From contig NC_043025.1 in assembly GCF_006345805.1 (NCBI RefSeq), positions 9,796,001-9,860,000 on the forward strand: a stretch of 64,000 nucleotides of DNA, in the 5' to 3' direction. A model generated the notes under the pieces. It did not search any database, was not told where the DNA came from, and saw nothing but the letters and a program-made list of their open reading frames with translations. How positions within the stretch are numbered: the first letter of the stretch is position 1; every line of letters begins with the position of its first letter. A program made the position numbers and the translations under genes. Below, in pieces: positions 25,666 to 46,507 of the stretch. This stretch comes from Octopus sinensis (lineage: Eukaryota).

Positions 25666-26020
25666 ATAATAATAATAATAATAACAGTTTCATATTTTTC
25701 CACATGGCCAGCAATTTGTCGGGAGGGGATGATTCAGTTACATCGAACTTAGTTTTCAACTGGTACTTAATTTTATCAACCCCGAAAGGATGAAAGGCAA
25801 AGTCGACCTCGGTGGAATTTGAACTCAGAACGTAACGGCAGACGAAATACCGATAAGAGATACAAATATTCAGAAAACTTAACATCGGTCGAAGGATTGC
25901 CTGGCATTTGAAGTGTCCATTGTTTTGTTTCTTTTCAATGCTATTACGTTTTTTTAAAAAATAACAAAATAAAACCAGTAAAGCACCAGACTTGATTGTG
26001 TTCCCATTATCCGACAATCC

Positions 26021-26046
26021 TATAAAAGAAGATCTGTTTATAAAAG
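26021..26046 (+). promoter_or_regulatory. Two TATAAAAG boxes upstream of vanin-like copy A
   Basis: TATAAAAG at 26021 and 26039, 100-125 bp before the ATG; both are conserved in copy B. Confidence 0.5.
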
Positions 26047-26145
26047 CATTGGTTAAATGAAAAGTCACTCGTTCACAGAGTGAAGTTGGGCTTTCACTGA
26101 AAGGACTTAAGAGATTGCAAGATCCACAACAAGCAAATTCCTAAA

Positions 26146-26346
26146 ATGAATTTCGTGTATACTATTATATTTTTCTTGCAACTCCCCGTGTTGCTGTCTG
26201 CGGAGAAAACTTTTACGGCCGCCGTTTTTGAGCCGACGATACCAAGGAGATCATCCATGGGTTTGGTTTCGCGTGACAATGCCATCGAACAAATGAAGAA
26301 TATCCTGAAAGGATACGCTGAGGTTGCTGCAACGGCTAGCAAAAAG
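26146..26346 (+). CDS. Vanin/biotinidase-like gene copy A, coding exon 1 (67 aa: signal peptide plus TFTAAVFE...ASKK)
   Basis: Hydrophobic N-terminus followed by TFTAAVFE (compare VNN1 DTFTAAVYE). Ends AAG|GTTTGT, a phase-0 donor at 26347 that joins in frame to exon 2. Confidence 0.88.
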
Positions 26347-26804
26347 GTTTGTAAATATCTTACAGAAAGTATTATTGCTTTATTTTGACACATTCTACCA
26401 GTATACGAAGTTAACTAGAAATTGTTTGCCGTTCAAAAGGAAAAGATCCAAAAAGTATTTACTTTGTGTAAAAAAAATATGGCAATCTTTCGTCTCTAGT
26501 AGACCTTTCCGTCGATTTCCGTAAAAAACTTTTTTGTTTTTTACATATGGGCTTGCAGGAACTTTTGAAGTAATGAGAGCGAAAGAGACTAAGAGAAAGG
26601 ATACGCTGAGGTTGCTGCAAAGGCGAGCAAAACGGTTTGTAAATATCTTACAGAAAGTATTTTACAAATGCAGTCCGGTACTATTTAAGAAGAGTGGTCC
26701 CGGTGCGCGCACTCGCGTAGACGCGCATCCGCTAGAGCTAGTCGTGACTAATCGATCCTTACTTTCTGTTTTTTGTGTTTTATTTACTTTGTTTAAAAAA
26801 ATTG

Positions 26805-27095
26805 CCTTGTGAGTGGATTTGGTAGACGGAAACTGAAAGAAGCCCATCGTATATATGTATATGTATATATGCGTGTGTGTGTTTGTGTGTCTGTGTTTGT
26901 CCCCCCTAGCATTGCTTGACAACCGATGCTGGTGTGTTTACGTCCCCCCATTAGCGGTTCGGCAAAAGAGACCGATAGAATAAGTACTGGGCTTACAAAG
27001 AATAAGTCCCAGGGTCGATTTGCTCGACTAAAGGCGGTGCTCCAGCATGGCCACACTCAAATGACTGAAACAAGTAAAAGAGTAAAAGAGTAAAA
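26805..27095 (+). mobile_element. Headless SINE family A copy in copy A intron
   Basis: Body and tail match; no corresponding copy seen in the copy B intron. Confidence 0.75.
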
Positions 27096-27614
27096 AAGAG
27101 TAATTAATAAAAAAAAATTTAGGGTTAGGGTTAGGGAGGAGGTTTAGGGTTAGTTACAGGATGTTGTCTCAGTTTTAGACGCAGCAAACGATTTTAGCTC
27201 AAAAGAGAGCATAGGGTTGGTTAAAATTCGAAAAATTAAACAACGTTAAACAAACAAATTACAATTTTCTCAAGAAAGCCAAGAGAAAAAAATGTTTTTA
27301 TTTTCACACATTCTACCAGTATACGAAGTTTTAAAGTGTTTAGTTAACTAGAAATTGTCTGCCGTTCAAAAGGAAAAGATCCAAAAGGTATTTACTTTGT
27401 GTAAAAAAATATTTATTTTGTGTTTTATTTACTTTGCTAGGTAGTCGTGGTAAGATCGTCTAGTCACGACTAGCTAGCGCGAGTGCGCGCACCGGCGCCA
27501 TTCTTTTTAAGTAGTAGCTGCACTCCTTTGATATAAAACAAACATTAATATATTATGATAATAAGCTTTGTTCTTGCATACATTAATTTATTACTGGATA
27601 AGTACGACTTATAT

Positions 27615-27615
27615 G

Positions 27616-27646
<31 letters not shown>

Positions 27647-28503
27647 ACTCATCCAACATGCTAGAAACAGCAGCTATGTTCCTCATCAATACATAAATTT
27701 CATTATCAAAAATCCATTTAAAGGAAACTACAGGCTATTTTAAAGAAAACCTGAAAAAAAAACGGGATGGTCATGGATGGTTATTGGTCTGCTCGACTTG
27801 CGACAGACTCGTCTAAACACAAATGTCTGTCGATCTGCAAAATAAATCAAATCACCACTTGGAAAGGATCAGTAAATCTATTGTTGTTGTTACACACACA
27901 TATATATATATAGAAGCACTGCTCTGATCATATATATATATATATATTTTAGAGGGAAACCACTATGTGGACACCCTTATGCTAGAAATAGATCCGCTAT
28001 GGTCTTACCACTAAGAAATGTTCTCAAGAAAAATTTATATAGAAGCGCTGCTCTGGTCATATATATATATTATATATATATGTGTGTGTGTGTACTCATC
28101 CAACATGCTAGAAACAGCAGCTATGTTCCTCATCAATACATAAATTTCATTATCAAAAATCCATTTAAAGGAAACTACAGGCTATTTTAAAGAAAACCTG
28201 AAAAAAAAACGGGATGGTCATGGATGGTTATTGGTCTGCTCGACTTGCGACAGACTCGTCTAAACACAAATGTCTGTCGATCTGCAAAATAAATCAAATC
28301 ACCACTTGGAAAGGATCAGTAAATCTATTGTTGTTGTTACACACACATATATATATATAGAAGCACTGCTCTGATCATATATATATATATATATTTTAGA
28401 GGGAAACCACTATGTGGACACCCTTATGCTAGAAATAGATCCGCTATGGTCTTACCACTAAGAAATGTTCTCAAGAAAAATTTATATAGAAGCGCTGCTC
28501 TGG

Positions 28504-28508
<5 letters not shown>
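27615..28508 (+). repeat. Direct tandem duplication, 2 x 447 bp, in copy A intron
   Basis: Near-identical units; single copy in the copy B intron (about 49430-49880). Confidence 0.85.
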
Positions 28509-28540
<32 letters not shown>

Positions 28541-28545
<5 letters not shown>

Positions 28546-29052
28546 TTAGAGACAAAACCACTATTTTGCAAAACAAACAAGGAAAGACTTAATCAATACA
28601 TTAGAAGGTATAGGAATATCTTTCAAAGATGAATCCCAAAATAGCGGTTCTATCTTACCTGTAAATTCCATAATTTACGAAATTGAGGTATTACACTCAA
28701 TATACAAAATTATAAATATTAAATAATAATAAATATTAGGGAATAAATCCAAATTTACAGGGAAAAAATCAGATTTAGGATTAAATCCAATCTTATAGTA
28801 AAATATTATATAATATTAATTAGAGACAAAACCACTATTTTGCAAAACAAACAAGGAAAGACTTAATCAATACATTAGAAGGTATAGGAATATCTTTCAA
28901 AGATGAATCCCAAAATAGCGGTTCTATCTTACCTGTAAATTCCATAATTTACGAAATTGAGGTATTACACTCAATATACAAAATTATAAATATTAAATAA
29001 TAATAAATATTAGGGAATAAATCCAAATTTACAGGGAAAAAATCAGATTTAG
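28541..29052 (+). repeat. Direct tandem duplication, about 2 x 274 bp
   Basis: attaattagagacaaaacc at 28541 and 28815. Confidence 0.85.
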
Positions 29053-29152
29053 AAAATGGAGAAACATACTTAAATCAATCAAACATCAACCATCAGATAA
29101 TACCCAATCAATACTTTATTACACCATTACATAACAGCAAAGACATTATACA

Positions 29153-29183
<31 letters not shown>

Positions 29184-29298
29184 CAGTAGAATCTCGGTTT
29201 TCGAACGACTCTGATTACGAAGAAATCATACTTTATATATATCTATATCTAAAGCCCGATTTATTCGCGATCAGAGTTCGAAAAGCGAGGTACTACTG
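29184..29298. mobile_element. Tigger/pogo-like MITE (115 bp)
   Basis: TA|CAGTAGAATCTCGGTTTTCGAAC ... GTTCGAAAAGCGAGGTACTACTG. Confidence 0.6.
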
Positions 29299-29824
29299 TG
29301 TATGTATATATATATGTGTGTGTGTATGTATGTTATAGAAAATATGGGCTATTTACGAGTGCTCTTAGAGAGTCAATGGGAAAAAATACAGGACAGAGGA
29401 CATTCTTTTCTACTCTGGGCACAAGGCCCGAAATTTTGGGGGAGAGGGCAAGTCGATTAGATCGACTCCAGTTCGCAACTGGTACTTAATTTATCGACCC
29501 CGAAAGGATGAAAGGCAAAGTCGACCCCGGCGGAATTTGAACTCAGAACATATAAACAGACGAAATACCTATTTCTTTACTACCCACTAGGGGCCAAACA
29601 CAGAGGGGACAAACATACGGATTAAGCCGATTAAATCGACCCCAGTGCGTAACTGGTACTTAATTTATCGACCCCGAAAGGATGAAAGCAAAGTCGACCT
29701 CGGCGGAATTTGAACTCAGAACGTAACGGCAGACGAAATATCGCTAAGCATTTCACCTGGTGTTCTAACGATTCTGCCACCTTGCCTTATATTGACAAAT
29801 GCTTGTAGAATATGAGAGTGGTAC

Positions 29825-30255
29825 TCTTTTACTCTTTTACTTGTTTCAGTCATTTGAATGCGGCCATGCTGGAGCACCGCCTTTAGTCGATCAAATCGAC
29901 CCCGGGACTTATTCTTTGTAAGCCCAGTACTTATTCTATCGGTCTCTTTTTGCCGAACTGCTAAGTGACGGGGACGTAAACACACCAGCATCGGTTGTCA
30001 AGCAATGCTAGGGGGACAAACACAGACACACAACCCTCCCCCCACATATATATATACATATATACGACAGGCTTCTTTCAGTTTCCGTCTACCAAATCCA
30101 CTCACAATGCATTGGTCGGCCCGGGGCTATAGCAGAAGACACTTGCCCAAGATGCCAGGCAGTGGGACTGAACCCGGAACCATGTGGTTGGTAAGCAAGC
30201 TACTTACCACACAGCCACTCCTGTGCCTATACGACAGGCTTCTTTCAGTTTCCGT
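29825..30255 (-). mobile_element. SINE family A copy in copy A intron
   Basis: Reverse-complement match to the family. Confidence 0.78.
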
Positions 30256-30564
30256 CTATTCATATTGTATGGTATTCATATTGTACAAGCATTTATCAAT
30301 ATAATCCAAAGGCAGTGAGCTGGCAGAATCGTTAGCGAACCTTCAGCATTCCTGGCTTTAAGGGAACCCGGAAAGGCCTACCTGGAGGTTCAATCTTCCA
30401 ATTCCTTTTACAGAACTTTGAAAAACTGAAAGCCCGCTGCAATATGGGTGTGAAATATGTGTATGAATCTAAGAGGGAAATATGTTGAAAAAAATCATAA
30501 TTAATTGATTCTCCTGTATTTTTATCAGGAACTTTTCAGCACCCCCTTGTGTAAATATATATAC

Positions 30565-30671
30565 ATGTGTATGTATGTATGTATGTATGTATGTATGTAT
30601 GTATGTATGTATGTATGTATGTGTATGTATGTATGTTTGTATGTATGTATGTTTGTATGTATGTATGTATG

Positions 30672-30704
<33 letters not shown>

Positions 30705-31875
30705 TTGTATGTATGTATGTATGTATGTATGTATGTATGTATGTATGTATGTATGTATGTTGTATGTATGTATGTTTGTATGTATGTATGTATGTATGTA
30801 TGTATGTATGTATGTATGTATGTATGTTTGTATGTATGTATGTATGTATGTATGTATGTATGTATGTATGTATGTATGTTTGTATGTATGTATGTTTCTA
30901 TGTATGTATGTATGTATGTATGTATGTGTGTATGTATGTATGTATGTTTGTATGTATGTATGTTTGTATGTATGTATGTTTGTATGTATGTATTTTGTAT
31001 GTATGTATGTATGTATGTATGTATGTATGCATGTATGTATGTATGTATGTTTGTATGTATGTATGTATGTATGTATGTATGTATGTATGTATGTATGTAT
31101 GTATGTATGTATGTATGTATGTATGTATGTATGTATGTATGTATGTTTGTATGTATGTATGTTTGTATGTATGTATGTATGTATGTATGTATGTATGTAT
31201 GTATGTATGTATGTTTGTATGTATGTATGTTTGTATGAATGTATAAATGTATGTTTGTATGTATGTATGTATATATGTATGCATGAATGTATGTATGTAT
31301 ACATGTATGTATGTATGAATGTATGTATGTATGTATGTATGTATGTATGTATGTATATATGTATGCATGAATGTATGTATGTATGTATGTATGTATGTAT
31401 GTATGTATGTATGTATGTATGTATGTTTGTATGTATGTATGTTTGTATGTATGTATGTTTGTATGTATGTATGTATGTATGTATGTATGTATGTATGTAT
31501 GTATGTTTGTATGTATGTATGTTTGTATGTATGTATGTATGTTGTATGTATGTATGTATGTATGTTTGTATGTATGTATGTTTGTATGAATGTATAAATG
31601 TATGTTTGTATGTATGTATGTATATATGTATGCATGAATGTATGTATGAATACATGTATGTATGTATGAATGTATAAATGTATGTTTGTATGTATGTATG
31701 TATATATGTATGCATGAATGTATGTATGTATACATGTATGTATGTATGTATGTATGTATGTATGTATGTATGCATGAATGTATGTATGTATGTATGTATG
31801 TATGTATGTATGTATGTATGTATGTATGTATGCATGTATGTATGTATGCATGTATGTATGTATGTATGTATGTAT
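30565..31875 (+). repeat. (TATG)n microsatellite, about 1.3 kb
   Basis: Interrupted TATG array; source of the MYVC/HTYI ORFs. Confidence 0.97.
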
Positions 31876-31913
31876 TTTTGTTATTGATATGAATATTGCA
31901 TTTATATTTTCAG

Positions 31914-33263
31914 GGTGTGGATATTTTGGTATTTCCTGAAAACGGCCTTATTGCACATTTGGACAATATCACTCGCCTTAGTATTAGGAGCTTTCTCGAT
32001 CTTATACCAGAGCCTAACAAAGAGAAACCCTGGATTCCATGTAATGAACCTTATCTCTATCCAAGAACAGAAATTCAGCAAGTTATTAGCTGCATTGCCA
32101 AAATAAACAGGATTTATCTTGTAGTCAATGTCGGAGACATACAACCCTGCAATCGTTTAGAAGATGCAGACTGCCCTAAAGATGGACTATACCAATACAA
32201 CACAAATGTTGTGTATTCATCTGAAGGGGCCCTTGTTTCCAGATATCACAAAAAACATCTTTTGTTTGAGTACCATTACAACTCCCCCAAGATTGCAGAA
32301 TATGGAGTGTTTGATACCCCATTTGGCCGTTTTGCAAGCATCACAGGTTATGATATATACTTCAATGACACGCTAAATGAATTAGTAACGAAACATCAAG
32401 TTTCAAATATTCTTTTTCCAAATCAATGGCTTGACTTTCCTCCTTTCTATCTCTCATCCTTATTCCACAATTCAATTGCTAAAGCCTTTAATATAAACCT
32501 TATTTCTGCGAATATCAGAAAAGAGAACGGATATTACGCACGAGGCGGAAGCGGAATTTACACACCCTCAATAAATCGTTATGTATATAAACCCTTCAAC
32601 CCTGCTCCTCCAGATGAATATATTCAGTTACAAGTTAAAAATCTTGAAAAGTCAGAAAGAAAATTTCTTTTGCCGCCAAAACGTAAAGTTCCCAAATCAG
32701 ACAACCCCGATGTTAGAACAAAACGCATGGCATTATTTTTTAATGTATCTGCTGTGATGCTTCAGAAGGATTCGGGCGTTGTTAGTGTGTGTAAATATAA
32801 TGCATGTTGTTCGCTTCAGTATGAATTCATGTCTAAAAGAAATTCAGCGTTTAATATCAATTATATTTTAGCAATCAGAAACGAGGAATTTGTTGATGCT
32901 TTTGCCATGCAATCATGCATTTTATGTCCAATCAAAGATGACAAAATATCATGTCTGATGTCTTTACCGGCCGGTATCCCCGATGGAGATGTTAGCTTTC
33001 GCAAACTAAAGATGACGGCTCATAATTTTAATACTTCTTATTTTTTCCCCCATATTGCGACATTCAATTCAAGTACTTACGATATCAATACATCTTGGGA
33101 GCATGACAGAGGAGAAATAGAAATTACAGAACCTGTTAAAAAGGTTTTTAACGCTGTTATATTCGGAAGATTGTATCCCAATTCAGCTACAGCCACATTC
33201 GCAATATTTCCAGCCATTCTATTGATCTTGTTAAATTTAATATCGAAGGAACTTCTTGTTTAA
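31914..33263 (+). CDS. Vanin/biotinidase-like gene copy A, coding exon 2 (449 aa); catalytic Cys replaced by Gly; C-terminal GPI-type signal
   Basis: Acceptor tttatattttcag|GGT at 31913/31914. Motifs VFPE (Glu), YHKKHL (Lys), SITGYD in place of xCFD, GGSGIY, FGRLY, then a hydrophobic tail. Uninterrupted ORF; about 516 aa spliced. Confidence 0.92.
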   Translation, partial: GVDILVFPENGLIAHLDNITRLSIRSFLDLIPEPNKEKPWIPCNEPYLYPRTEIQQVISCIAKINRIYLVVNVGDIQPCNRLEDADCPKDGLYQYNTNVVYSSEGALVSRYHKKHLLFEYHYNSPKIAEYGVFDTPFGRFASITGYDIYFNDTLNELVTKHQVSNILFPNQWLDFPPFYLSSLFHNSIAKAFNINLISANIRKENGYYARGGSGIYTPSINRYVYKPFNPAPPDEYIQLQVKNLEKSERKFLLPPKRKVPKSDNPDVRTKRMALFFNVSAVMLQKDSGVVSVCKYNACCSLQYEFMSKRNSAFNINYILAIRNEEFVDAFAMQSCILCPIKDDKISCLMSLPAGIPDGDVSFRKLKMTAHNFNTSYFFPHIATFNSSTYDINTSWEHDRGEIEITEPVKKVFNAVIFGRLYPNSATATFAIFPAILLILLNLISKELLV

Positions 33264-33415
33264 GATATTCCCCCTTTCTTGTCCTCCTCGCGCTCAACTG
33301 CACTTTTGTGGAACTTCCTTGAAGCCGGTTTTATTATCCTCATCTCCTGACCTTCAACACAAAACAAATCTTATGTACATGACACGGGTTATCAGTAACA
33401 TTCGACTTCGGAAAA

Positions 33416-33992
33416 TCTCTCTCTATATATAAACGGCTGTTTGTCTGTGTGTGTGTCAGGTTGTACCCTCACCCTGACTACGGCTTTCAACCGTTCCCCC
33501 AGTTCTGAAGAAAATCGATAAATTCGACGTGGGGTCGAGAATAAGAAACACAAACCACAGACTGTCTAGGGGACGCAACTCGACCTTTTTAACTCTCAAA
33601 AAAAATCTCTCTATATATAAACGGAAGTTTGTCTGTCTGCGTGTCTGTGTGTGTGTCAGGTTGTACCCTCACCCTGACCACGGCTTTCAACCGATTCTGA
33701 TGAAACTTGACACACACATAGCCCAATGTCATAATTCAAAACTAACGCATCGAAAATTTTGAAAAGTTCCCCCAGTTCTGAAAAAAATCGATAAATTCGA
33801 CATGGGGGTCGAGAATCAGAAACACAAACCACAGACTGTCATGGGGACGCAACTCGACCTTTTTAACTCTCAAAAAAAAAATTTACCATCATTTTTTTCC
33901 CATTTTTTTGCTATTTTTTGGCTATAACTATCTAAAAATGCTTTATAGTTATTTCCCTTACAAACCCGAGCAACGCCGGGTGATACTGCTAG
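33416..33992 (+). mobile_element. Non-autonomous Helitron with duplicated 5' segment (site shared with right arm)
   Basis: A|TCTCTCTC...CTAG|T, with a second 5' start at 33606; same flanks as 44499-44885. Confidence 0.78.
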
Positions 33993-34286
33993 TAGTAAAT
34001 AAAGACTAATTATGATTACGTATAAAGCATTTAATTGATATCACATGGTTATTGCCCCTCCATCATATTTCGAAAAGTATGAAAACGTTATGGACACTGT
34101 CTCCAAATTCACTGACTAAATCATATCAAAATGATACGTTAAAAATAAGAAACGTCATTTGTTTTATTCATTAATCAATAAAATCCATATTCTCTTAATC
34201 ATACTTGTTGTTGATTTTTTTAATATTCAATGTTAAAACAATTTTCAAATAATTCAATTATGGTAATATTTTCAAGTGACTAGGGT

Positions 34287-35365
34287 GGCGAGCTGGCAGA
34301 GACGTTAGCACGCCGGGCGAAACGCTTAGCGGTATTTCGTCTGCCGTTACGTTCTGAGTTCAAATTCTGCCAAGGACCACTTTGCCTTTCATCCTTTTGG
34401 GGTCGATAAATTGAGTACCAGTTACGCGCTAGGATCGATATAATCGACTTAATCCGTTTGGCTGTCCTTGTTTCTCCTCTCTGTGTTTAGCCCCTTGTGG
34501 GTAGTAAAGAAATAGGTATTTCGTCTGCCGCTACGTTCTAAGTTCAAATTCCGCCGAGGACCACTTTGCCTTTCATCCTTTTGGGGTTGATAAATTAAGT
34601 ACCAGTTATGCACTAGGGTCGATATAATCGACTTATTCCGTTTGGCTGTCCTTGTTTGTCCTCTCTGTGTTTAGCCCCTTGTGGGTAGTAAAGAAATAGG
34701 TACTTCGTCTGCCGTTACGTTCTGAGTTCAAATTCCGCCGAGGACCACTTTGCCTCTCATCCTTTTGGGGTTGATAAATTAAGTACCAGTTACGCGCTAG
34801 GATCAATATAATCGACTTAATCCGTTTGGCTGTCCTTGTTTGTCTCCTCTGTGTTGAGCCCCTTGTGGGTAGTAAATAAATAGGTATTTCGTCTGTCTGT
34901 ATGTTCTGAATTGAAATTATGCTGTTGTCAACTTTGCCTTTCATCCTTTTGGGGTTGATAAATTAAGTACCAGTTATGCACTAGGGTCGATATAATCGAC
35001 TTATTCCGTTTGGCTGTCCTTGTTTGTCCTCTCTGTGTTTAGCCCCTTGTGGGTAGTAAAGAAATAGGTACTTCGTCTGCCGTTACGTTCTGAGTTCAAA
35101 TTCCGCCGAGGACCACTTTGCCTCTCATCCTTTTGGGGTTGATAAATTAAGTACCAGTTACGTACTCGGGTCGATATAATCGACTTAATCCGTTTGGCTG
35201 TCCTTGTTTGTCCCCTCTGTGTTTAGCCCCTTGTGGGTAGTATATAAATAGGTATTTCGTCTGTCTGTATGTTCTGAATTGAAATTCCACTGTCGTCAAC
35301 TTTGTCTTTCATCCTTTCGGGGTCGATAAATTAAGTACCAGGGAAATACTGGGGTCAATGTAATC
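34287..35365 (+). repeat. Tandem array (5 full units plus a partial, about 184 bp each) of SINE family B with one head
   Basis: Head ggcgagctggcagagacgttagcacgccggg followed by repeated body units. Confidence 0.85.
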
Positions 35366-35489
35366 GACTTACTCCACCTTACAAAATTTCAGACCTTGTT
35401 CCTATAGCAGAAAGGATCATTATTATTGTTATTTTTATTATTATTATTATTATTTTATTATTATTATTATTATTTTATTATTATTATTA

Positions 35490-35990
35490 TTATTATTATT
35501 GAGTGAGAGAGCAGTGCATGCCATCAAAGTGACAAAAGTAAAATATACAAAGCTCAGTATACCCATCGTGAATACCCGTCTGATAAGGGTACACCAGGCA
35601 CATGCATCACAACCATATGTGCGCGACATGGTGATCTCATATCAAGATAAACAGCACATGACCTTGCAGGTGGGGCCCAGTTAGAATTTTCTTCTGGTCG
35701 AGTGGCCCATCCCGCTGAAAAGGTCTCTGAATAAGGGTTGTTTCCAGAGGTGAATTATTCAAACCTCAAAGAATCGCTCTCAACACATGTCTATGATGCT
35801 CCCCCACTACTTCTGCTCGTGATCAGAGATGCACATATCGTCAGCCACTAAGGGACATTCTCAACTGGTTATGGTCAAACAACTGACAAGCAAATCTGTG
35901 GTATTGAGCAGAATATTTGCTTTGGCCCATCTTTTATACCAAGACAAAACAATATAAATGATAACACTTCCAATCTGTTAAGATCAGAAG
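35490..35990 (+). mobile_element. Interspersed repeat family D
   Basis: (ATT)n-gagtgagagagcagtgcatgccatcaaagtgac... family match. Confidence 0.72.
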
Positions 35991-36009
35991 CCACGAGAGC
36001 CACTGCCTG

Positions 36010-36013
36010 GTGC

Positions 36014-36067
<54 letters not shown>

Positions 36068-36226
36068 GAGTTCAAATTCCGCCGAGATCGACTTTGCCTT
36101 TCATTCTTTCGGGGTCGATTAAATAAGTACCAGTTAAGCACTGGCGTCGATGTAATCGACTTAATCTCCTTATATGTCCTTGTTTGTCCCCTCTATGTTT
36201 AGCCCCCTGTGGACAATAACGAAAAA

Positions 36227-36274
<48 letters not shown>

Positions 36275-36359
36275 CATTATTATCATTATTATTATTATTA
36301 TTATTATTATATCATTATCATATTTATTATTATCATTATCATTATTATTATCAATTATT

Positions 36360-36390
<31 letters not shown>

Positions 36391-36465
36391 TATTATTATT
36401 ATTATATTATTATTATTATATTATTATTATTATATTATCATTAGTATTATTATTATTATTATTAT
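36010..36465. repeat. (ATT)n arrays flanking a SINE B fragment
   Basis: Direct inspection. Confidence 0.9.
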
Positions 36466-36620
36466 AACCCCTATCTGTAATTTTAATGAAATTCGAAACA
36501 TAGATATTCCAGTTCATTACAGAAAATATAACAGAAAAGTCTAATTCTTCAACTGCATGTAACACGGGCAACGCCGGGTATCTCTGTTAGTATTTTATAA
36601 AAGTGAAACTGTTCTCAGTT

Positions 36621-37478
36621 TGTGGAGGCGCAATGGCCCAGTGGTTAGGGCAGCGGACTCACGGTCGTAGGATCGCGGTTTCGATTCCCAGACCGGGCAT
36701 TGTGAGTGTTTATTGAGCGAAAACACCTAAAAAGCTCCACGAGGCTCCGGCAGGGGATGGTGGTGATCCTGCTGTACTCTTTCACCACCAAACTTTCTCT
36801 CACTCTTCTTCCTGTTTCTGTTGTACCTGTATTTCAAAGGGCCGGCCTTGTCACTCTCTGTGTCACGCTGAATCTCCTCAAGAGCTATGTTAAGGGTACT
36901 CTTGTCTGTGGAGTGCTCAGCCACTTGCACGTTAATTCCACGAGCAGGCTGTTCCGTTGATTCGGATCAACCGGAACCCTCGTCATCGTAACTGACGGAG
37001 TGCTCCTATGTGTAGTACCTGTATTCCAAAAGGCCAGCCTTGTCGCATTCAGGGGTTGCGAGTCTGTGGAGTGCTCAGCCACTTGCACGTTAATTCCACG
37101 AGCAGGCTGTTCCGTTGATTCGGATCAACCGGAACCCTCGTCATCGTAACTGACGGAGTGCTCCTATGGTAGTACCTGTATTCCAAAGGGCAGCCTTGTC
37201 GCATTCAGGGGTTGCGAGTCTGTGGAGTGCTCAGCCACTTGCACGTTAATTCCACGAGCAGGCTGTTCCGTTGATCGGATCAACGGAACCCTCGTCATCG
37301 TAACTGACGGAGTGCTCCTATGTGTAGTACCTGTATTCCAAAAGGCCAGCCTTGTCGCATTCAGGGGTTGCGAGTCTGTGGAGTGCTCAGCCACTTGCAC
37401 GTTAATTCCACGAGCAGGCTGTTCCGTTGATTCGGATCAACCGGAACCCTCATCGTCGGAACCTGACGGAGTGCTCCT
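36621..37478 (+). mobile_element. SINE family C with 3' tail repeated four times (about 157-bp unit)
   Basis: gtctgtggagtgctcagcc at 36904, 37062, 37218 and 37374. Confidence 0.85.
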
Positions 37479-37667
37479 ATATATTCTCCGTTTGCCAAAC
37501 TGGGAAAGAACAAAGAAAGAATCAAGAGATTTTTTTTAAGGAAAGGAGAAAAAAAACGAAATTTTACATGGAATCACAGGCATGACTGTGTGGTTTGGAA
37601 GTTTGCTTTACAACCACATGGTTTCAAGTTCAGTCCCACTACATGGCACCTTAAACAAATTATTTTT

Positions 37668-39140
37668 TTTACTACCCACAAGGGGCTAAACATAGAGAGG
37701 ACAAACAAGGACAGACAAACGGATTAAGTCGATTACATCGACCCCAGTGCGCAACTGGTACTTAATTTATCAACCCCGAAAGGATGAAAAGCAAAGTTGA
37801 CCTCGGCAGAATTTGAACTCAGAACGTAACGGCAGACGAAATACCTATTTCTTTACTACCCACAAGGGGCTAAACACAGAGAGGACAAACCAGGACAGAC
37901 AAACGGATTAAGTCGTTACATCGACCCCAGTGCGCAACTGGTACTTAATTTATCAACCCCGAAAGGATGAAAAGCAAAGTTGACCTCGGCAGAATTTGAA
38001 CTCAGAACGTAACGGCAGACGAATACCTCTTTTCTTTACTACCACCAGGGGCTAAACACAGAGAGGACAAACCAGGACAGACAAACGGATTAAGTCGATT
38101 ACATCGACCCCAGTGCGCAACTGGTACTTAATTTATCAACCCCGAAAGGATGAAAAGCAAAGTTGACCTCGGCAGAATTTGAACTCAGAACGTAACGGCA
38201 GACGAAATACCTATTCTTTACTACCCACAAGGGGCTAAACACAGAGAGGACAAACAAGGACAGACAAACGGATTAAGTCGATTACATCGACCCCAGTGCG
38301 CACTGGTACTTAATTATCAACCCCGAAAGGATGAAAAGAAAGTTGACCTCGGCAGAATTTGAACTCAGACGTAACGGCAGACGAAATACCTATTCTTTAC
38401 TACCCACAAGGGGCTAAAAACAGAGAGGACAACAAGGACAGACAAACGGATTAAGTCGTTAATCGACCCCAGTGCGCAACTGGTACTTAATTTATCAACC
38501 CCGAAGGATGAAAAGCAAAGTTGACCTCGGAAGGAGAATTTGAACTCAGAACGTAACGGCAGACGAAATACCTATTTCTTTACTACCCACAAGGGGCTAA
38601 ACACAGAGAGGACAAACAAGGACAGACAAACGGATTAAGTCGATTACATCGACCCCAGTGCGCAACTGGTACTTAATTTATCAACCCCGAAAGGATGAAA
38701 AGCAAAGTTGACCTCGGCAGAATTTGAACTCAGAACGTAACGGCAGACGAAATACCTATTTCTTTACTACCCACAAGGGGCTAAACACAGAGAGGACAAA
38801 CCAGGACAGACAAACGGATTAAGTCGATTACATCGACCCCAGTGCGCAACTGGTACTTAATTTATCAACCCCGAAAGGATGAAAAGCAAAGTTGACCTCG
38901 GCAGAATTTGAGAATCAGAACAGACGAACGCAGACGAATACCTATTTCTTTACTACCCACAAGGGGCTAAACACAGAGAGGACAAACAAGGACAGACAAA
39001 CGGATTAAGTCGATTACATCGACCCCAGTGCGCAACTGGTACTTAATTTATCGACCCCGAAAGGACGAAAGGCAAAGTCAACCTCGGCAGAATTTGAACT
39101 CAGGCATTTCGCCCGGCGTGCCAATGTTTGCCAGCTCACC
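37668..39140 (-). repeat. Tandem array (8 x about 183 bp) of SINE family B
   Basis: Eight ctacccacaaggggctaaac-type anchors at a regular period. Confidence 0.88.
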
Positions 39141-39197
39141 GCCTTCCAAACAAATGTCCTCTACTACAGCTCAGATTGACCAATGCACTGTGAGTGG

Positions 39198-39798
39198 ATG
39201 GAGTGGCTGTGTGGTAAGTAGCTTGTTACCAACCACATGGTTCCGGGTTCAGTCCCACTGCATGGCACCTGGGCAAGTGTCTTCTGCTATAGCCCGGGGC
39301 CGACCAATGCCAGGTGAGTGGATTTGGTAGCGGAAAACGGAAAGAGAAGCCCATCATATATATATATATAAATAGGCATAGGAGTGGCTGTGTGGTAAGT
39401 AGTTTGTTTACCAACCACATGGTTCTGGGTTCAGTCCCACTGCGTGGCACCTTGGGCAAGTGTCTTCTACTATAGCCTTGGGCCGACCAATGCCTTGTGA
39501 GTGGATTTGGTAGAAGGAAACTGAAAGAAGCCCGTCGTATATATGTATATAAATATACATATATTCTTTTATTCTTTTACTTGTTTCAGTCATTTGACTG
39601 TGGCCATGCTGGAGCACCACCTTTTAGTCGAGCAAATTGACCCCCAGGACTTATTCTTATGTAAGCTTAATACTTATTCTATCGGTCTATTTTGCCAAAC
39701 CGCTAAGTGACGGGGACATAAATACACCAGCCTCGGTTGTCAAGCAATGCTAGGGGGACAAACACAAAACACAACAACCACACCGCATATATATATAT

Positions 39799-39857
<59 letters not shown>

Positions 39858-39925
39858 CATATACATATATATACGACGGGCTTCTTTCAGTTTCCGTCAA
39901 CTAAATCCACTCACACGGCTTTGGC
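39198..39925. mobile_element. SINE family A copies (two plus heads, one minus copy)
   Basis: Family motifs present. Confidence 0.72.
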
Positions 39926-40268
39926 TGGATGCCCTTCCTAATGCCAAACATATATATATATATATATATATTTGTTTATATATTTATATGTCGTAAGTGA
40001 ATATAAGGAGGTCTCATACTTATATATATATATGTATGCATGTGTGTAGTGTGTATATATATATAATGTATATATATACAAAATAAGAAAATGGAGGAAT
40101 AGATTCCTTTCAATCATCAACTTCCAGATAATACCAATTCATATAATTTATTCACTAATTAATTAAATAGGAACATCCAAATCCAACAGAATAAGACAGA
40201 ATAAAACAATACACATCAATAAGTAAGACAATACCATAAAAATAATACCTAATCCCTATCTCATTTTG

Positions 40269-40311
<43 letters not shown>

Positions 40312-40375
40312 ATATATATTATATATATTATGTATATATAATTATATATATATATATTATTTATATATATATATG

Positions 40376-40448
<73 letters not shown>

Positions 40449-40522
40449 AATATTAGGGAATAAATCCAAAATTACAGGGAAAAAAAATCAGATTTAGGAT
40501 TAAATCTAATTTTATAGTAAAT

Positions 40523-40566
40523 CCACCTGACGAATGTCATTTGAAGACATGAAACAATTGTAGTGG
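40523..40566 (+). ncRNA. Minimal type-I hammerhead ribozyme motif with canonical core
   Basis: ccac-CTGACGA-atgtc(atttgaa)gacat-GAA-ACAATTGT(palindrome)-A-gtgg; predicted cleavage after GUA at 40562. Confidence 0.8.
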
Positions 40567-40659
40567 CGATTTATTTACTTTATATTAAAATTTTTTATGT
40601 ATTGATTAAGTCTTTCCTTGTTTGATTTGCAAAATAGTGGTTTTGTCTCGAATTAACAT

Positions 40660-40691
<32 letters not shown>

Positions 40692-40713
40692 CATATATAT
40701 ATACATACATATA

Positions 40714-40764
<51 letters not shown>

Positions 40765-40766
40765 CA

Positions 40767-40836
<70 letters not shown>

Positions 40837-40847
40837 CATACATATAT

Positions 40848-40894
<47 letters not shown>

Positions 40895-41068
40895 TTATAT
40901 ATATATATATATACTTTATTTAAAGCAGCAGAAAATTCAACAAAACCTGTTACTCTGAGTTTCCCGTTGCCGTTAAATGAAACATATCACTCTACCACTG
41001 GTATTTGAGTACTCTTTTTTCCACCTTGTTTCACATTTATGTGTTTTACTCCGGTATATATATATATA

Positions 41069-41101
<33 letters not shown>

Positions 41102-41354
41102 GTGTTTGCACAGTTAGATGCGGACTTAATCGTGGTCTGACGGGCATCTTTCTTCATGTTTCCTGAAATTTATATGCTCATCTTTATCAGTATATTTACC
41201 TTCTCTGGGATGTCACTAATTAATTTAAGAACTTTGTATTGTTGGAAAGCATATATGGTCTGCTTGGAATCCTGCTTCAAGTTCCTGGAGCTCACATCTA
41301 TAACTTTATAAGTATATTTACACTCTCTAAAATGTTTGGAAAGCCTATATGGAA

Positions 41355-41438
41355 TTAGCTGAAGATTATTTGACATTATATTTGCTGTAATTTTTGAAGC
41401 TTTAATAAAATGTTTATAGTATGAAACAATTGTACTAA
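41355..41438 (+). ncRNA. Degenerate copy of the 48320 hammerhead family
   Basis: ttag-CTGAAGA-ttat...gtat-GAA-ACAATTGT-A-ctaa; the stem-II closing pair is broken. Flank 41200-41460 is homologous to 47750-47880 plus 48267-48430. Confidence 0.55.
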
Positions 41439-41474
41439 ACTACCGATCCATTCTTGTTGCTTATTTTTTGGTTT

Positions 41475-41593
41475 TATATATATGTGTGGTATATATATAT
41501 ATATATTATATATACATTATATATACATATATAATATACATATCTAATATATATATATATACATATATATACATACATATACATATATATAAC

Positions 41594-41654
<61 letters not shown>

Positions 41655-41947
41655 CATTATATATACATATATATATACATATATATATATATAACATATA
41701 CATATATACATATATACATATATATACATATATATATATACATATATACATATATATACATATATATACATATATATATATATACATATATATACATATA
41801 TATATATATTATATACATATATATACATATATATATATATATATACATATATATACATACATATATATACATATATATACATACATATATATACATATAT
41901 AATACATATATATATATATATATAATATATATATCATATATATATAT

Positions 41948-41978
<31 letters not shown>

Positions 41979-42205
41979 TACACATATATATATATATATA
42001 TATATACATATATATATACATATATATACATATATATATACATATATATACATATATATATATATACAATACATATATATACATATATATACATATATAT
42101 ACACATATATAACATATATATACATATATATACATATATATATACATATATATACATATATATACACATATATATATCTACATATATAATATATATATTA
42201 TTTAC

Positions 42206-42247
<42 letters not shown>

Positions 42248-42260
42248 TTATATATATATT
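41475..42260. repeat. (TA)n/(TACA) low-complexity array
   Basis: Direct inspection; similar tracts at 40270-40445 and 40660-40912. Confidence 0.95.
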
Positions 42261-42749
42261 TGCTTATTTATTTATATATCGTCAGTGAATATAAACCCCC
42301 TGCTCCCCCCCCCCAAGCACACAAGAAAAGGCCGCTTAAGGATTACCTTAGGTCTCTTGTCCATAAATGACCTGGTTTTATAGTTGTGTAACATCAAATC
42401 CTAAAACCTGTTGGCTAAAGGCCTCTTTAGGATATAAAGGAGGAAATGAGCTCATTATACCATGTCAACAAAGGGGTTTGTTTCCCCTCAGCTATGGATC
42501 ATCGATGTCAAGAAAGAGGGTCGTGAATTTCTGGAAATCGATTGCCGGTGACCCTGCTATCTCGTGGGCTCCAATTGGAGAGCTTGAATTTCCTGAAATG
42601 CAAGCATGGAGTTCAGAATGTTCCCTAGGTCGAGGGAATCTTTTAGGATTCTCGCCCTTTCTGCTATCCATAATTTACAGCAGTTATTCCCGTTAATGTA
42701 AGGGCTTGCATGATATTGTGTATGGAATCTCATCTAACTATAAAAGATG

Positions 42750-44265: not shown

Positions 44266-44498
44266 TATTAAGAAAATCAACAACAAGTATAATTAAGAGA
44301 ATATCGATTTTATTGATTAATGAATAAAACAAATGATGTTTCTTATTTTTAACGTATCATTTTGATATGATTTAGTCAGTGAATTTGGAGACAGTGTCCA
44401 TAACGTTTTCATACTTTTCAAAATATGATGGAGGGGCAATAACCATGTGATATCAATTAAATGCTTAATACGTAATCATAATTAGTCTTTATTTACTA

Positions 44499-46396: not shown

Positions 46397-46435
46397 CTGA
46401 AAATATAAATGCAATATTCATATCAACAACAAAAA

Positions 46436-46473
46436 TACATACACATACATACATACATACATACATACATACA

Positions 46474-46507
<34 letters not shown>

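What the first reader, a model, noticed from the sequence alone, without database searches (positions are those of the whole stretch)
32337..32354. Enzyme plus pseudoenzyme pair: vanin-like copy A lacks the catalytic cysteine, copy B keeps it
Seen: copy A reads ATC ACA GGT TAT GAT (I-T-G-Y-D, Gly codon 32346-32348) where copy B reads ATC GTA TGT TTT GAT (I-V-C-F-D, Cys codon 45964-45962). Both keep the catalytic Glu (VFPE) and Lys (YHKK), signal peptide, splice sites, TATA boxes and GPI-type tail, with no stops or frameshifts. Established: vanins and biotinidase need a Glu-Lys-Cys triad (human VNN1 E79/K178/C211), and loss of the Cys abolishes hydrolysis. Inference: copy A is a cell-surface, non-hydrolytic ligand binder, decoy or regulator, possibly dimerising with copy B. 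That would be a dedicated enzyme/pseudoenzyme system that I do not know to have been described in cephalopods.
Basis: partly seen in the sequence, partly recalled or inferred. Interest (0 to 1): 0.85.

Follow-up and report, generated by a model that had tools for sequence, protein, structure and literature searches.

The report
Young cysteine-less duplicate of octopus vanin
In Octopus sinensis a vanin-type surface amidase gene was recently duplicated in inverted orientation; the new copy has lost its catalytic cysteine and rebuilt the loops around the active site while otherwise staying intact, making it a likely newly born "dead enzyme", not an established two-protein system.

Summary
Copy A (XP_029653108.1; exons 26146-26346 and 31914-33263, +) has GGT (Gly) at 32346-32348. 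Copy B (XP_029652967.1; exons 50853-50650 and 46396-45038, -) has TGT (Cys) there. This column aligns to Cys211 of human vanin-1. Both genes are intact, with two exons each, and keep Glu, Lys, the second Glu, the signal peptide, the TATA boxes and the hydrophobic tail.

The pair is young. O. bimaculoides has one Cys-type gene at the syntenic site. B holds the ancestral position, and A is an inverted daughter copy carrying about 285 bp of promoter.

Synonymous change is equal on the two branches, but A has 51 non-synonymous changes against B's 21. The excess lies in four stretches around the catalytic residues (15 vs 1). Nitrilase-domain omega is about 0.95 in A and about 0.09 in B.

A still avoids conserved columns, keeps all structural cysteines and has only in-frame indels. 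A selected non-hydrolytic protein is therefore more likely than simple decay, but this is not proven.

Expression, binding and pairing with B are untested. Ser-type triads in cephalopods are already published, and a beetle vanin-like protein carries the same T-G-Y-D motif.

The parts
25861..34226 (+). Left arm of the inverted duplication, containing copy A
   Evidence: blastn of the two halves of the window gives colinear minus-strand HSPs at 93-96% identity in non-coding parts; inverted repeats I1, I2, I8, I14
44265..51132 (-). Right arm of the inverted duplication, containing copy B. Homology of B's 5' flank to O. bimaculoides continues to 51382, so this is the parental position
26021..26045 (+). 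Two TATAAAA boxes of copy A (26021-26027 and 26039-26045; -125 and -107 from the ATG)
   Evidence: the 5' flank differs from B's at 10 of 274 aligned sites
26146..26346 (+). Copy A exon 1 (residues 1-67; signal peptide MNFVYTIIFFLQLPVLLSA)
   Evidence: tblastn with P0001 and exact rebuilding of XP_029653108.1 with a GT donor
26347..31913 (+). Copy A intron (GT..AG), with a ~1.4 kb microsatellite at about 30.5-31.9 kb
31914..33263 (+). Copy A exon 2 (residues 68-516 plus stop): nitrilase domain, Vanin_C base domain and hydrophobic C-terminal tail
32346..32348 (+). GGT, Gly212 of copy A, in the column of the catalytic Cys (human VNN1 Cys211)
32253..32282 (+). A-specific stretch 1 (codons 181-190, KHLLFEYHYN vs KHLFYEPYYN), flanking Lys180 and Glu186
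32334..32360 (+). A-specific stretch 2 (codons 208-216, ASITGYDIY vs ASIVCFDIY): the nucleophile motif
32418..32456 (+). A-specific stretch 3 (codons 236-248, PNQWLDFPPFYLS vs PNLWFDTPPFFFS)
32511..32546 (+). A-specific stretch 4 (codons 267-278, NIRKENGYYARG vs NIKINN--FVRG), including a 6-nt in-frame insertion
50650..50853 (-). Copy B exon 1
45038..46396 (-). Copy B exon 2 (residues 69-520 plus stop)
45962..45964 (-). TGT, the catalytic Cys213 of copy B
50956..50980 (-). Two TATAAAA boxes of copy B (-127 and -109 from the ATG)
34227..44264 (.). Repeat-rich spacer between the two tail-to-tail genes (184-nt satellite arrays, AT-rich microsatellites); no gap in the assembly here

Best explanation
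Copy A is a recently born, catalytically disabled paralogue (a pseudoenzyme) of the O. sinensis vanin-like amidase gene. After the lineage split from O. bimaculoides, about 7-8 kb carrying the whole two-exon gene and about 285 bp of promoter was duplicated in inverted orientation. The copy landed between the parental gene (B) and the neighbouring zinc-finger gene. The daughter copy then lost the thiol nucleophile (TGT to GGT), so it cannot form the thioester acyl-enzyme that nitrilase-superfamily amidases need. The four sequence stretches around the catalytic Glu/Lys/Glu/Cys positions were heavily rewritten, including the Phe-to-Tyr change next to the nucleophile that accompanies nucleophile replacement across this family. 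The rest of the protein stayed under purifying selection: fold, structural cysteines, base domain, signal peptide and membrane-anchor tail. The most likely product is therefore a surface-anchored, non-hydrolytic vanin-like protein that acts by binding, either through a remodelled pocket or through the base domain. Shown here: the gene structures, the residue loss, the direction and relative age of the duplication, the rate asymmetry and where it falls, and the intact frame. Inferred: loss of hydrolysis, retention by selection, surface location, and a binding role.
For: Family and fold: Pfam CN_hydrolase and Vanin_C above the cut-offs for both copies; VNN1 E-values of about 1e-52 to 1e-54; AF2 pLDDT 81.5, pTM 0.83 and Foldseek TM 0.78/0.87 to 4cyy; the B control model is equivalent. 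Direction of duplication: O. bimaculoides has one Cys-type gene, whose 3' flank runs straight into sequence colinear with window 17417->267; only B's 5' flank extends beyond the arm boundary. A and B are sisters: dS(A,B) = 0.145 against 0.26-0.28 to Obim3. Asymmetry: 23 vs 19 synonymous changes (p = 0.54) but 51 vs 21 non-synonymous changes (p = 4e-4). Nitrilase domain: 35N:10S in A (omega ~0.95) vs 3N:9S in B (~0.09); base domain 0.47 vs 0.58. Location: 15 vs 1 replacements in the four stretches (binomial p = 2e-7); outside them 23 vs 14 (p = 0.14); 7 of 38 lie within +-2 residues of a catalytic residue, with 1.5 expected (p = 6e-4). Continuing constraint on A: only 11 of 38 changes hit octopod-invariant columns, which make up 54% of sites (p = 0.002). 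Changes avoid family-conserved columns (p = 0.004), and derived residues are enriched for states the family tolerates (p = 0.02). All invariant cysteines except the nucleophile are kept. P(no stop) is 0.02-0.39 and P(no frameshift) is 0.0006-0.04 under neutrality; both A-branch indels are in frame. Precedent: engineered Cys-to-Ala/Ser mutants of this fold crystallise with substrate bound (6ypa, 8hpc, 5h8l, listed). Phe follows the nucleophile in 143/158 Cys proteins but only 2/19 non-Cys proteins. A beetle protein independently has E-K-E-G followed by Tyr.
Against: There is no evidence of transcription or protein. There is no orthologue in another species, so long-term retention is not shown. 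The O. vulgaris annotation in the database contains neither an A nor a B orthologue. Overall omega on the A branch is 0.6-0.64 and only marginally below 1 (p = 0.04). Nitrilase-domain omega of about 0.95 is what neutral drift would give. A gene that became non-functional only recently would look the same. The four stretches were defined after seeing the data. Their position at the active site rests on proximity in the sequence to the catalytic residues and on general knowledge of nitrilase-superfamily motifs, not on measured 3D distances. Polarisation relies mainly on one outgroup gene. A carries only about 285 bp of the parental upstream region, so its expression may differ or be lost.
Confidence: 0.55

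Rival explanations
1. Copy A is a redundant duplicate on its way to becoming a pseudogene. The Cys loss was the first disabling hit, the catalytic domain now drifts neutrally, and the frame is still open only because the copy is young.
For: Nitrilase-domain omega is about 0.95 on the A branch. The duplicate is lineage-specific with no known orthologue. Only about 285 bp of promoter was copied. On the youngest clock, the chance of no stop codon is 0.39 and of no frameshift 0.04, which is not extreme.
Against: A's replacements are not spread uniformly as drift predicts. They are 4-5 fold enriched next to catalytic residues and depleted at conserved columns elsewhere. Outside the four stretches A is not significantly faster than B. 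Base-domain omega is 0.47, the same as in the active copy. Both A-branch indels are in frame, while 10 of 14 indels in the non-coding arms are not multiples of 3. Splice sites, TATA boxes, poly(A) signals and all structural cysteines are kept.
Confidence: 0.27
2. One reading: A and B form a dedicated functional pair, with A binding or regulating B (heterodimer, decoy or substrate-presenting partner) on the same cell surface.
For: The promoters are nearly identical and the signal and anchor sequences are identical, so co-expression and co-localisation are conceivable. Francis et al. cite the vanin-1 crystal structure as a homodimer (PMC5541922). Exon 2 is more diverged than its flanks, which fits selection keeping the two copies different.
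Against: Nothing here tests interaction or co-expression. O. bimaculoides manages with one gene at this locus, so the pairing is not a conserved system. A's changes concentrate at the catalytic centre, not on any identified interface.
Confidence: 0.08
3. Copy A is still a hydrolase that uses another nucleophile (a neighbouring hydroxyl such as Thr211 or Tyr213, or activated water), by analogy with the Ser-type cephalopod paralogues.
For: Glu76, Lys180 and Glu186 are all retained. The Cys loss comes with V211T and F213Y, which put hydroxyl groups on either side. Ser-type members are thought possibly active (PMC5541922).
Against: Gly has no side chain. Thr at -1 is simply the common family state (36% of family members, including human FTCFD), so it is not a special gain. 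Residues flanking the nucleophile in a strand-turn do not occupy its position. No nitrilase-superfamily enzyme working without Cys or Ser at this site is known to me (own knowledge).
Confidence: 0.05
4. Artefact: the Gly codon, or the whole second copy, is an assembly or sequencing error (a mis-joined haplotype or uncorrected long-read error).
For: Only one assembly carries the sequence. No independent contig or fragment was found. The O. vulgaris annotation has no counterpart.
Against: There are four substitutions within 8 nt at the motif and 115 differences across exon 2, with 3.2% non-coding divergence. That is far above allelic variation; the O. sinensis-O. vulgaris difference is only about 0.8%. 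Long-read errors are mainly indels, yet the frame is perfect. Both copies lie on one gap-free stretch, and the only N run is at 58207-58306. The copies sit in a defined inverted arrangement with a unique spacer.
Confidence: 0.03

Closest known systems
Human vanin-1 / pantetheinase (VNN1; PDB 4CYF, 4CYG, 4CYY, 7SLV) and the vanin/biotinidase branch of the nitrilase superfamily
   Same: Two-domain architecture (CN_hydrolase plus Vanin_C base domain), secretory signal and C-terminal hydrophobic anchor signal. Glu, Lys and the second Glu are conserved in both copies, and B also has the Cys. Predicted fold TM 0.78/0.87.
   Different: Copy A has Gly at the Cys211 position. All octopod members have Leu where human VNN1 has Glu249, the domain-interface residue whose mutation to Gln inactivates VNN1 (PMC4834066; alignment). 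Identity to the human protein is about 30%.
Cephalopod symplectin/pantetheinase expansion with E-K-S and E-R-S triads (Francis, Christianson and Haddock 2017, PeerJ 5:e3633)
   Same: Same gene family and same animal class. The nucleophile is replaced after duplication, and the following Phe is replaced by Tyr, exactly as in copy A. O. sinensis itself has an E-K-S paralogue (XP_029637940.1) and an E-R-S paralogue (XP_029634192.1).
   Different: Those groups carry Ser, which may still act as a nucleophile. They are old and conserved (more than 90% identity among three Octopus species) and lie on other chromosomes. Copy A has Gly, arose independently (GGT vs TCT, each one step from TGT), is young, and is so far known from one species.
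Other nucleophile-less vanin-like proteins in databases: Zophobas morio 'vanin-like protein 1' (T-G-Y-D), Blattella germanica PSN42773.1 (Gly in two domains), Liolophura sinensis XP_064610976.1 (Ala), Gigantopelta aegis XP_041378241.1 (Asn)
   Same: Full-length vanin-like proteins lacking a Cys or Ser nucleophile. The beetle protein keeps Glu/Lys/Glu and has the same Gly-Tyr pair as copy A.
   Different: They are unrelated lineages (24-35% identity) and none has been characterised. I found no paper that discusses them.
Pseudoenzyme paralogues arising by gene duplication in general, e.g. the catalytically inactive cathepsin B1 paralogue of Trichobilharzia regenti that binds cystatin (PMC7054455)
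   Same: A duplicate of an active hydrolase loses the catalytic Cys but remains an intact protein that could act by binding (for the example).
   Different: For copy A, expression and binding have not been shown. It is much younger than most described pseudoenzymes.
Engineered Cys-to-Ala/Ser nitrilase-superfamily mutants used as substrate traps (e.g. PDB 6YPA C146A amidase with glutaramide, 8HPC C171A carbamoylase with substrate, 5H8L C158S)
   Same: The same fold without the thiol still folds and binds its substrate without turnover (entries listed).
   Different: Those are laboratory point mutants with otherwise native pockets. Copy A has about 15 further replacements around the pocket, so its ligand, if it has one, may differ.

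Membership tests
Vanin/biotinidase branch of the nitrilase (CN-hydrolase) superfamily | CN_hydrolase domain (PF00795) above the gathering score | tested here: met
   A scores 28.5 bits and B 44.5 bits against a cut-off of 23.2
Vanin/biotinidase branch of the nitrilase (CN-hydrolase) superfamily | Vanin C-terminal base domain (PF19018) | tested here: met
   A scores 61.8 bits and B 57.3 bits against a cut-off of 23.4
Vanin/biotinidase branch of the nitrilase (CN-hydrolase) superfamily | Two-domain fold like human VNN1 | tested here: met
   AF2 model of A has pLDDT 81.5; Foldseek to 4cyy gives E = 7e-41 and TM 0.78/0.87. The B model is equivalent
Vanin/biotinidase branch of the nitrilase (CN-hydrolase) superfamily | Catalytic Glu, Lys and second Glu | tested here: met
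   A has E76, K180 and E186; B has E77, K181 and E187. All are invariant in the alignment
Vanin/biotinidase branch of the nitrilase (CN-hydrolase) superfamily | Catalytic Cys nucleophile (VNN1 Cys211) | tested here: not met
   Copy A has Gly212 (GGT). Copy B meets this feature with Cys213 (TGT). A is therefore a structural member of the family but not a canonical enzyme member
Vanin/biotinidase branch of the nitrilase (CN-hydrolase) superfamily | Secretory signal peptide and GPI-type C-terminal signal | tested here: inconclusive
   There is a hydrophobic N-terminus (mean Kyte-Doolittle 2.07) and a C-terminal hydrophobic stretch after small residues (NSATAT), identical in A and B. No dedicated signal or GPI predictor was available. 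The tail ends in SKELLV, so a short-tailed transmembrane anchor is not excluded
Vanin/biotinidase branch of the nitrilase (CN-hydrolase) superfamily | Pantetheinase or biotinidase activity | not testable with these tools
   This needs a biochemical assay
Pseudoenzyme (catalytically dead paralogue retained by selection) | Loss of a residue essential for catalysis in an otherwise intact, foldable protein | tested here: met
   Cys to Gly; intact ORF, splice sites and structural cysteines; confident model
Pseudoenzyme (catalytically dead paralogue retained by selection) | Purifying selection after the loss | tested here: inconclusive
   In favour: conserved columns are avoided (p = 0.002 and 0.004), base-domain omega is 0.47 (p = 0.035), and all indels are in frame. 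Against: overall omega is about 0.6 (p = 0.04), nitrilase-domain omega is about 0.95, and the time of the Cys loss is unknown
Pseudoenzyme (catalytically dead paralogue retained by selection) | Conservation of the dead copy in other species | tested here: not met
   There is no second copy at the syntenic O. bimaculoides locus and no orthologue among the database proteins. The O. vulgaris genome itself could not be searched
Pseudoenzyme (catalytically dead paralogue retained by selection) | Expression of the protein | not testable with these tools
   No RNA-seq or proteome access, and no literature hit
Cephalopod Ser-type (E-K-S / E-R-S) vanin/symplectin groups | Ser at the nucleophile position | tested here: not met
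   A has Gly (GGT). The Ser paralogues use TCT, so the events are independent
Cephalopod Ser-type (E-K-S / E-R-S) vanin/symplectin groups | Tyr instead of Phe after the nucleophile | tested here: met
   A has Y213, like IVSYD and VSSYD
Cephalopod Ser-type (E-K-S / E-R-S) vanin/symplectin groups | Membership of the old conserved clades | tested here: not met
   A is sister to B, with dS 0.145; distance to the Ser group is dS about 0.41-0.44
Unprocessed pseudogene | Disabling stops, frameshifts or splice defects | tested here: not met
   None: there is an exact two-exon ORF with a GT-AG intron
Unprocessed pseudogene | Neutral evolution (omega about 1, uniform substitution pattern) over the whole gene | tested here: not met
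   Omega is about 0.95 only in the nitrilase domain. The pattern is non-uniform and avoids conserved columns

The most novel reading that the evidence does not exclude
Copy A records the birth of a recurrent class of non-hydrolytic 'pseudo-vanins'. In this reading, the Glu-Lys-Glu-Gly configuration with Tyr after the former nucleophile (T-G-Y-D) evolved independently in an octopus and in a beetle. It would be a selected ligand-binding state of GPI-anchored vanin-like proteins, and the burst of replacements in A's four active-site stretches (15 vs 1), together with exon 2 resisting the homogenisation seen in its flanks, would reflect positive selection for a new binding specificity.
Probability: 0.2. 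Interest if true: 0.6.

Novelty: new member of a known kind. Interest (0 to 1): 0.35.

Why it matters
If copy A is expressed and selected, it is an unusually young and cleanly resolved case of pseudoenzyme birth. The parent and daughter copies are known, the ancestral single-copy state survives in a sister species, and the changes are confined to the catalytic centre. It would also add a side-chain-less nucleophile variant to the cephalopod vanin/symplectin expansion, a family that has already produced a photoprotein. It would further point to an unstudied set of nucleophile-less vanin-like surface proteins in molluscs and insects. If it is only a decaying duplicate, it is ordinary.

Tried and rejected
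1. **Independent support for GGT.** An exact look-up of A's exon-2 ORF in other assemblies found nothing. A search with the 133-residue A-specific segment returned nothing, not even P0001 itself, so it is uninformative and not a true negative.
2. **Gene conversion from the Ser-type paralogue as the source of A's changes.** Rejected. The codons differ (TCT vs GGT), and only 4 scattered A changes out of 38 match that paralogue.
3. **Templated patch from elsewhere in the window.** Rejected. The A-specific 21-mer and 24-mer are unique even allowing 3 mismatches.
4. **Haplotype or assembly duplication.** Rejected on divergence (3.2% non-coding, 8.5% in exon 2, against about 0.8% between O. sinensis and O. 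vulgaris) and because no gap lies between the copies.
5. **A-to-I RNA editing restoring Cys.** Impossible, because GGT contains no adenosine (direct from the sequence).
6. **V211T as a meaningful new hydroxyl.** Rejected. Thr is the commonest family state at that position.
7. **Low model confidence at A residues 186-193 as a sign of unfolding.** Rejected. The same region is also the weakest part of the nitrilase domain in the B control model.
8. **Literature on vanin or nitrilase pseudoenzymes, octopus pantetheinase expression, or the source of run SRR11869391.** Nothing found.
9. **Denser cephalopod census with the family profile.** No further octopod members and no other T-G-Y-D cephalopod protein.
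Full report
**1. The observation**

The + strand at 32337-32354 reads AGC ATC ACA GGT TAT GAT (S-I-T-G-Y-D), with GGT at 32346-32348. The - strand around 45964-45962 reads ATC GTA TGT TTT GAT (I-V-C-F-D). Each motif lies in a long open exon: 31896-33263 (+) and 46414-45038 (-). Both translations hit Pfam CN_hydrolase (PF00795) and Vanin_C (PF19018) above the curated cut-offs. Both also match human pantetheinase/vanin-1 (4cyf) at about 1e-52 to 1e-54. In those alignments A's 'sitGydi' and B's 'sivCfdi' pair with human 'iftCfdi' (Cys211), VFPE pairs with Glu79 and YHKK with Lys178.

**2. Gene models and identity**

The window is from Octopus sinensis (GCA_006345805.1). Copy A is XP_029653108.1 ('pantetheinase-like', 516 aa) and copy B is XP_029652967.1 ('pantetheinase', 520 aa). 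Both are two-exon genes that rebuild exactly with GT-AG introns.

| Copy | Strand | Exon 1 | Exon 2 |
|---|---|---|---|
| A | + | 26146-26346 | 31914-33263 |
| B | - | 50853-50650 | 46396-45038 |

- Each gene has two TATAAAA boxes about 107-127 nt upstream of the ATG.
- The signal peptides are identical.
- The last 45 residues, including the hydrophobic tail, are identical.
- The AATAAA signals sit in symmetric positions.
- A has lost only the catalytic cysteine; all cysteines invariant across the family are kept.
- An AlphaFold model of A is confident (pLDDT 81.5, pTM 0.83) and superposes on VNN1 (TM 0.78/0.87). The B control model is equivalent (pLDDT 80.5), and its weakest nitrilase-domain segment is in the same place as A's.

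**3. Origin of the pair**

The genes lie tail to tail in an inverted duplication, about 25861-34226 against 51132-44265. O. bimaculoides has a single, Cys-type co-orthologue (XP_014777355.1, locus L002). Its 3' flank continues within about 0.9 kb into sequence colinear with window 17417->267, including the C2H2 zinc-finger gene. Only B's 5' flank stays homologous to O. bimaculoides beyond the arm boundary. B is therefore the parental copy, and A is an inverted daughter inserted between B and the zinc-finger gene, carrying about 285 bp of upstream sequence.

A and B are each other's closest relatives: dS(A,B) = 0.145, against 0.26-0.28 to the O. bimaculoides gene. The Ser-type paralogues of O. 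sinensis and O. vulgaris differ at only 12 of 1569 nt. That is far less than A differs from B, so the duplication should predate that split and is expected in O. vulgaris. No A or B orthologue from O. vulgaris is in the protein databases, and I could not search that genome.

**4. How the two copies evolved**

I polarised the differences with the O. bimaculoides gene.

| Measure | Branch A | Branch B | Test |
|---|---|---|---|
| Synonymous changes | 23 | 19 | p = 0.54 |
| Non-synonymous changes | 51 | 21 | p = 4e-4 |
| Amino-acid replacements | 38 | 15 | p = 0.0016 |
| Nitrilase domain, N:S (omega) | 35:10 (~0.95) | 3:9 (~0.09) | |
| Linker and base domain, omega | 0.47 | 0.58 | |
| Replacements in the four stretches | 15 | 1 | p = 2e-7 |
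| Replacements outside the four stretches | 23 | 14 | p = 0.14 |

The counts are, the omega values and the stretch counts.

The four stretches are residues 181-190, 208-216, 236-248 and 267-278. In A, 7 of 38 replacements lie within +-2 residues of a catalytic residue, where 1.5 are expected (p = 6e-4); in B, none of 15 do. At the DNA level these stretches differ at 26 of 126 nt, against 7.3% for the rest of exon 2.

**5. Decay or retention?**

Several tests argue against plain decay:

- Only 11 of A's 38 replacements fall on columns invariant in the other octopod sequences, although those columns make up 54% of positions (p = 0.002). Eight of those 11 are inside the four stretches.
- Against a family sample of 184 aligned domains, A's changes fall on less conserved columns than random mutations would (p = 0.004). 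Its derived residues are more often states the family tolerates (p = 0.02).
- The exceptions at highly conserved columns are F184L, C212G and F213Y, all next to catalytic residues.
- Under neutrality, the chance of no stop codon is 0.02-0.39 and of no frameshift 0.0006-0.04, depending on the clock used. Both A-branch indels (+6 nt and -15 nt) are in frame, whereas 10 of 14 indels in the non-coding arms are not multiples of three.

Other results favour decay:

- Whole-gene omega on the A branch is about 0.6 and only marginally below 1 (p = 0.04).
- The catalytic domain's omega is indistinguishable from 1.
- A recent loss of function cannot be excluded.

I put a selected, non-hydrolytic protein at about 0.55 and nascent pseudogenisation at about 0.27.

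**6. An unexplained discordance**

| Compartment | A-B divergence | Divergence to O. bimaculoides | Ratio |
|---|---|---|---|
| Non-coding parts of the arms | 3.2% | 10.6% | 0.30 |
| Exon 1 | 4.0% | ~13% | 0.30 |
| Exon 2, 4-fold sites | 8.3% | 16.3% | 0.51 (p = 0.18 vs non-coding, not significant) |
| Exon 2, third positions | 11.2% | 16.1% | 0.69 (p = 1e-4 vs non-coding) |
| Exon 2, positions 1+2 | 7.2% | 7.0% | 1.02 |

The excess at third positions is symmetric between A and B (23 changes each). Exon 2 therefore looks older than its introns and flanks. Two readings are possible:

- The non-coding arms were later homogenised by gene conversion while exon 2 escaped. That could be through selection against conversion, or simply because A's rapid divergence suppressed conversion there.
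- If the non-coding clock is correct, A's replacement rate in the nitrilase domain (6.7%) exceeds the neutral rate per branch (1.7%), which would indicate positive selection.

I could not separate these two readings.

**7. Mechanistic reading**

Nitrilase-superfamily amidases work through a thioester on the Cys (established knowledge; triad as in PMC5541922). Gly cannot do this, and GGT contains no adenosine for RNA editing to recode. The PDB holds engineered Cys-to-Ala/Ser mutants of this fold with substrate bound (6ypa, 8hpc, 5h8l), so a thiol-less pocket can still bind a ligand. A's pocket has about 15 further changes, so its ligand may differ, or binding may have moved to the base domain. 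The depositors of the VNN1 structure likened the base domain to a lectin-binding domain and suggested a role in cell homing (PMC4834066). Surface anchoring is inferred from the unchanged signal peptide and tail.

**8. Comparison with what is known**

- Francis et al. 2017 described four cephalopod groups of this family. Some have E-K-S or E-R-S triads, and Tyr typically replaces Phe after the Ser.
- Octopus has both types as old, conserved genes on other chromosomes. The E-K-S group is XP_029637940.1 and its orthologues; the E-R-S group is XP_029634192.1 and its orthologues.
- A's loss is independent of these: GGT and TCT are each one step from TGT.
- In a census of 214 family domains the nucleophile column reads C 184, S 21, G 6, A 2, N 1. 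The counts are not phylogenetically independent.
- Nucleophile-less members include proteins from a chiton (Ala), a vent snail (Asn), a cockroach (Gly in two domains) and a beetle. The beetle 'vanin-like protein 1' has Glu/Lys/Glu intact and the same T-G-Y-D motif as A.
- Phe follows the nucleophile in 143/158 Cys proteins but in only 2/19 non-Cys proteins.
- I found no paper on nucleophile-less vanins.

**9. Verdict**

The inference that canonical hydrolysis is lost is sound. The 'dedicated enzyme/pseudoenzyme system' is not supported: this is a young, species-lineage-specific inverted duplicate. The pattern of change (catalytic centre rewritten, the rest conserved, frame intact) favours a newly born pseudoenzyme over simple decay. 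Transcription, binding and any interaction with B remain untested. It is a new member of a known kind, of moderate interest.

Noticed in passing
window 25861-34226 vs 44265-51132 (exon 2: 31914-33263 / 46396-45038): Exon 2 of the two copies is more diverged than the introns, exon 1 and flanks around it. A-B divergence relative to O. bimaculoides divergence is 0.69 at third positions and 1.02 at positions 1+2, against 0.30 for non-coding sequence. The excess is symmetric at third positions. Either the non-coding arms were homogenised by gene conversion and exon 2 escaped, or exon 2 evolved faster after duplication.
   Followed up: partly
P0209 (Zophobas morio 'vanin-like protein 1'), residues around GIFTGYDILF: A beetle vanin-like protein with signal peptide, hydrophobic tail and intact Glu/Lys/Glu has Gly-Tyr at the nucleophile position. 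This is the same T-G-Y-D motif as octopus copy A, at 24% overall identity, so it arose independently.
   Followed up: partly
Family census: Liolophura XP_064610976.1, Gigantopelta XP_041378241.1, Blattella PSN42773.1, Logan P0096/P0173: Nucleophile-less (Ala, Asn, Gly) vanin-like proteins occur sporadically in other molluscs and insects. Across the family, Phe after the nucleophile is nearly universal in Cys proteins (143/158) and rare in non-Cys proteins (2/19).
   Followed up: partly
window 12068-13669 (-): An intact single-exon C2H2 zinc-finger gene (533-aa ORF, many HTGEKPY-linked fingers; the 84-nt direct-repeat family D11). It is syntenic with a 511-aa gene next to the single vanin-like gene of O. 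bimaculoides (L002 16730-18265; 88% nt identity).
   Followed up: partly
window 30500-31890 vs 46420-46620: The (ATGT/ATAC)-type microsatellite just upstream of exon 2 is about 1.4 kb long in A's intron but only about 0.2 kb in B's. It produces long spurious ORFs on both strands.
   Followed up: no
window 7349-7715, 21124-22343, 34331-35401, 51423-52872 (and inverted at 38533-38911): Arrays of a 184-nt satellite or SINE-like unit at 85-97% identity are scattered through the window, including at the inner edges of both duplication arms. They may have mediated the rearrangement.
   Followed up: no
window 58207-58306 and 58321-59484: A 100-N assembly gap lies directly next to a 108-nt tandem array of 9 copies at 96-99% identity. 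This is outside the gene pair.
   Followed up: no
L005 (O. sinensis) vs L006 (O. vulgaris), Ser-type paralogue: The E-K-S paralogues of O. sinensis and O. vulgaris differ by 11 non-synonymous changes and 1 synonymous change. These are scattered in the nitrilase domain and mostly derived in O. vulgaris. The ratio is suggestive of fast protein evolution but is not significant on these counts.
   Followed up: partly
alignment A1, column of human VNN1 Glu249 (A residue ~250, 'SSLFHNS'): All octopod members, including the presumably active copy B, have Leu (other molluscs Gln) where human VNN1 has Glu249, the buried domain-interface residue whose mutation to Gln abolishes activity (PMC4834066). The interface mechanism proposed for VNN1 may therefore not apply to molluscan enzymes.
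   Followed up: no
protein databases: The O. vulgaris annotation contains orthologues of the Ser-type (CAI9723734.1) and E-R-S-type (CAI9719979.1) paralogues, but none of copy A or copy B, although the duplication should predate the O. sinensis/O. vulgaris split. This could be an annotation gap, low expression or loss.
   Followed up: no
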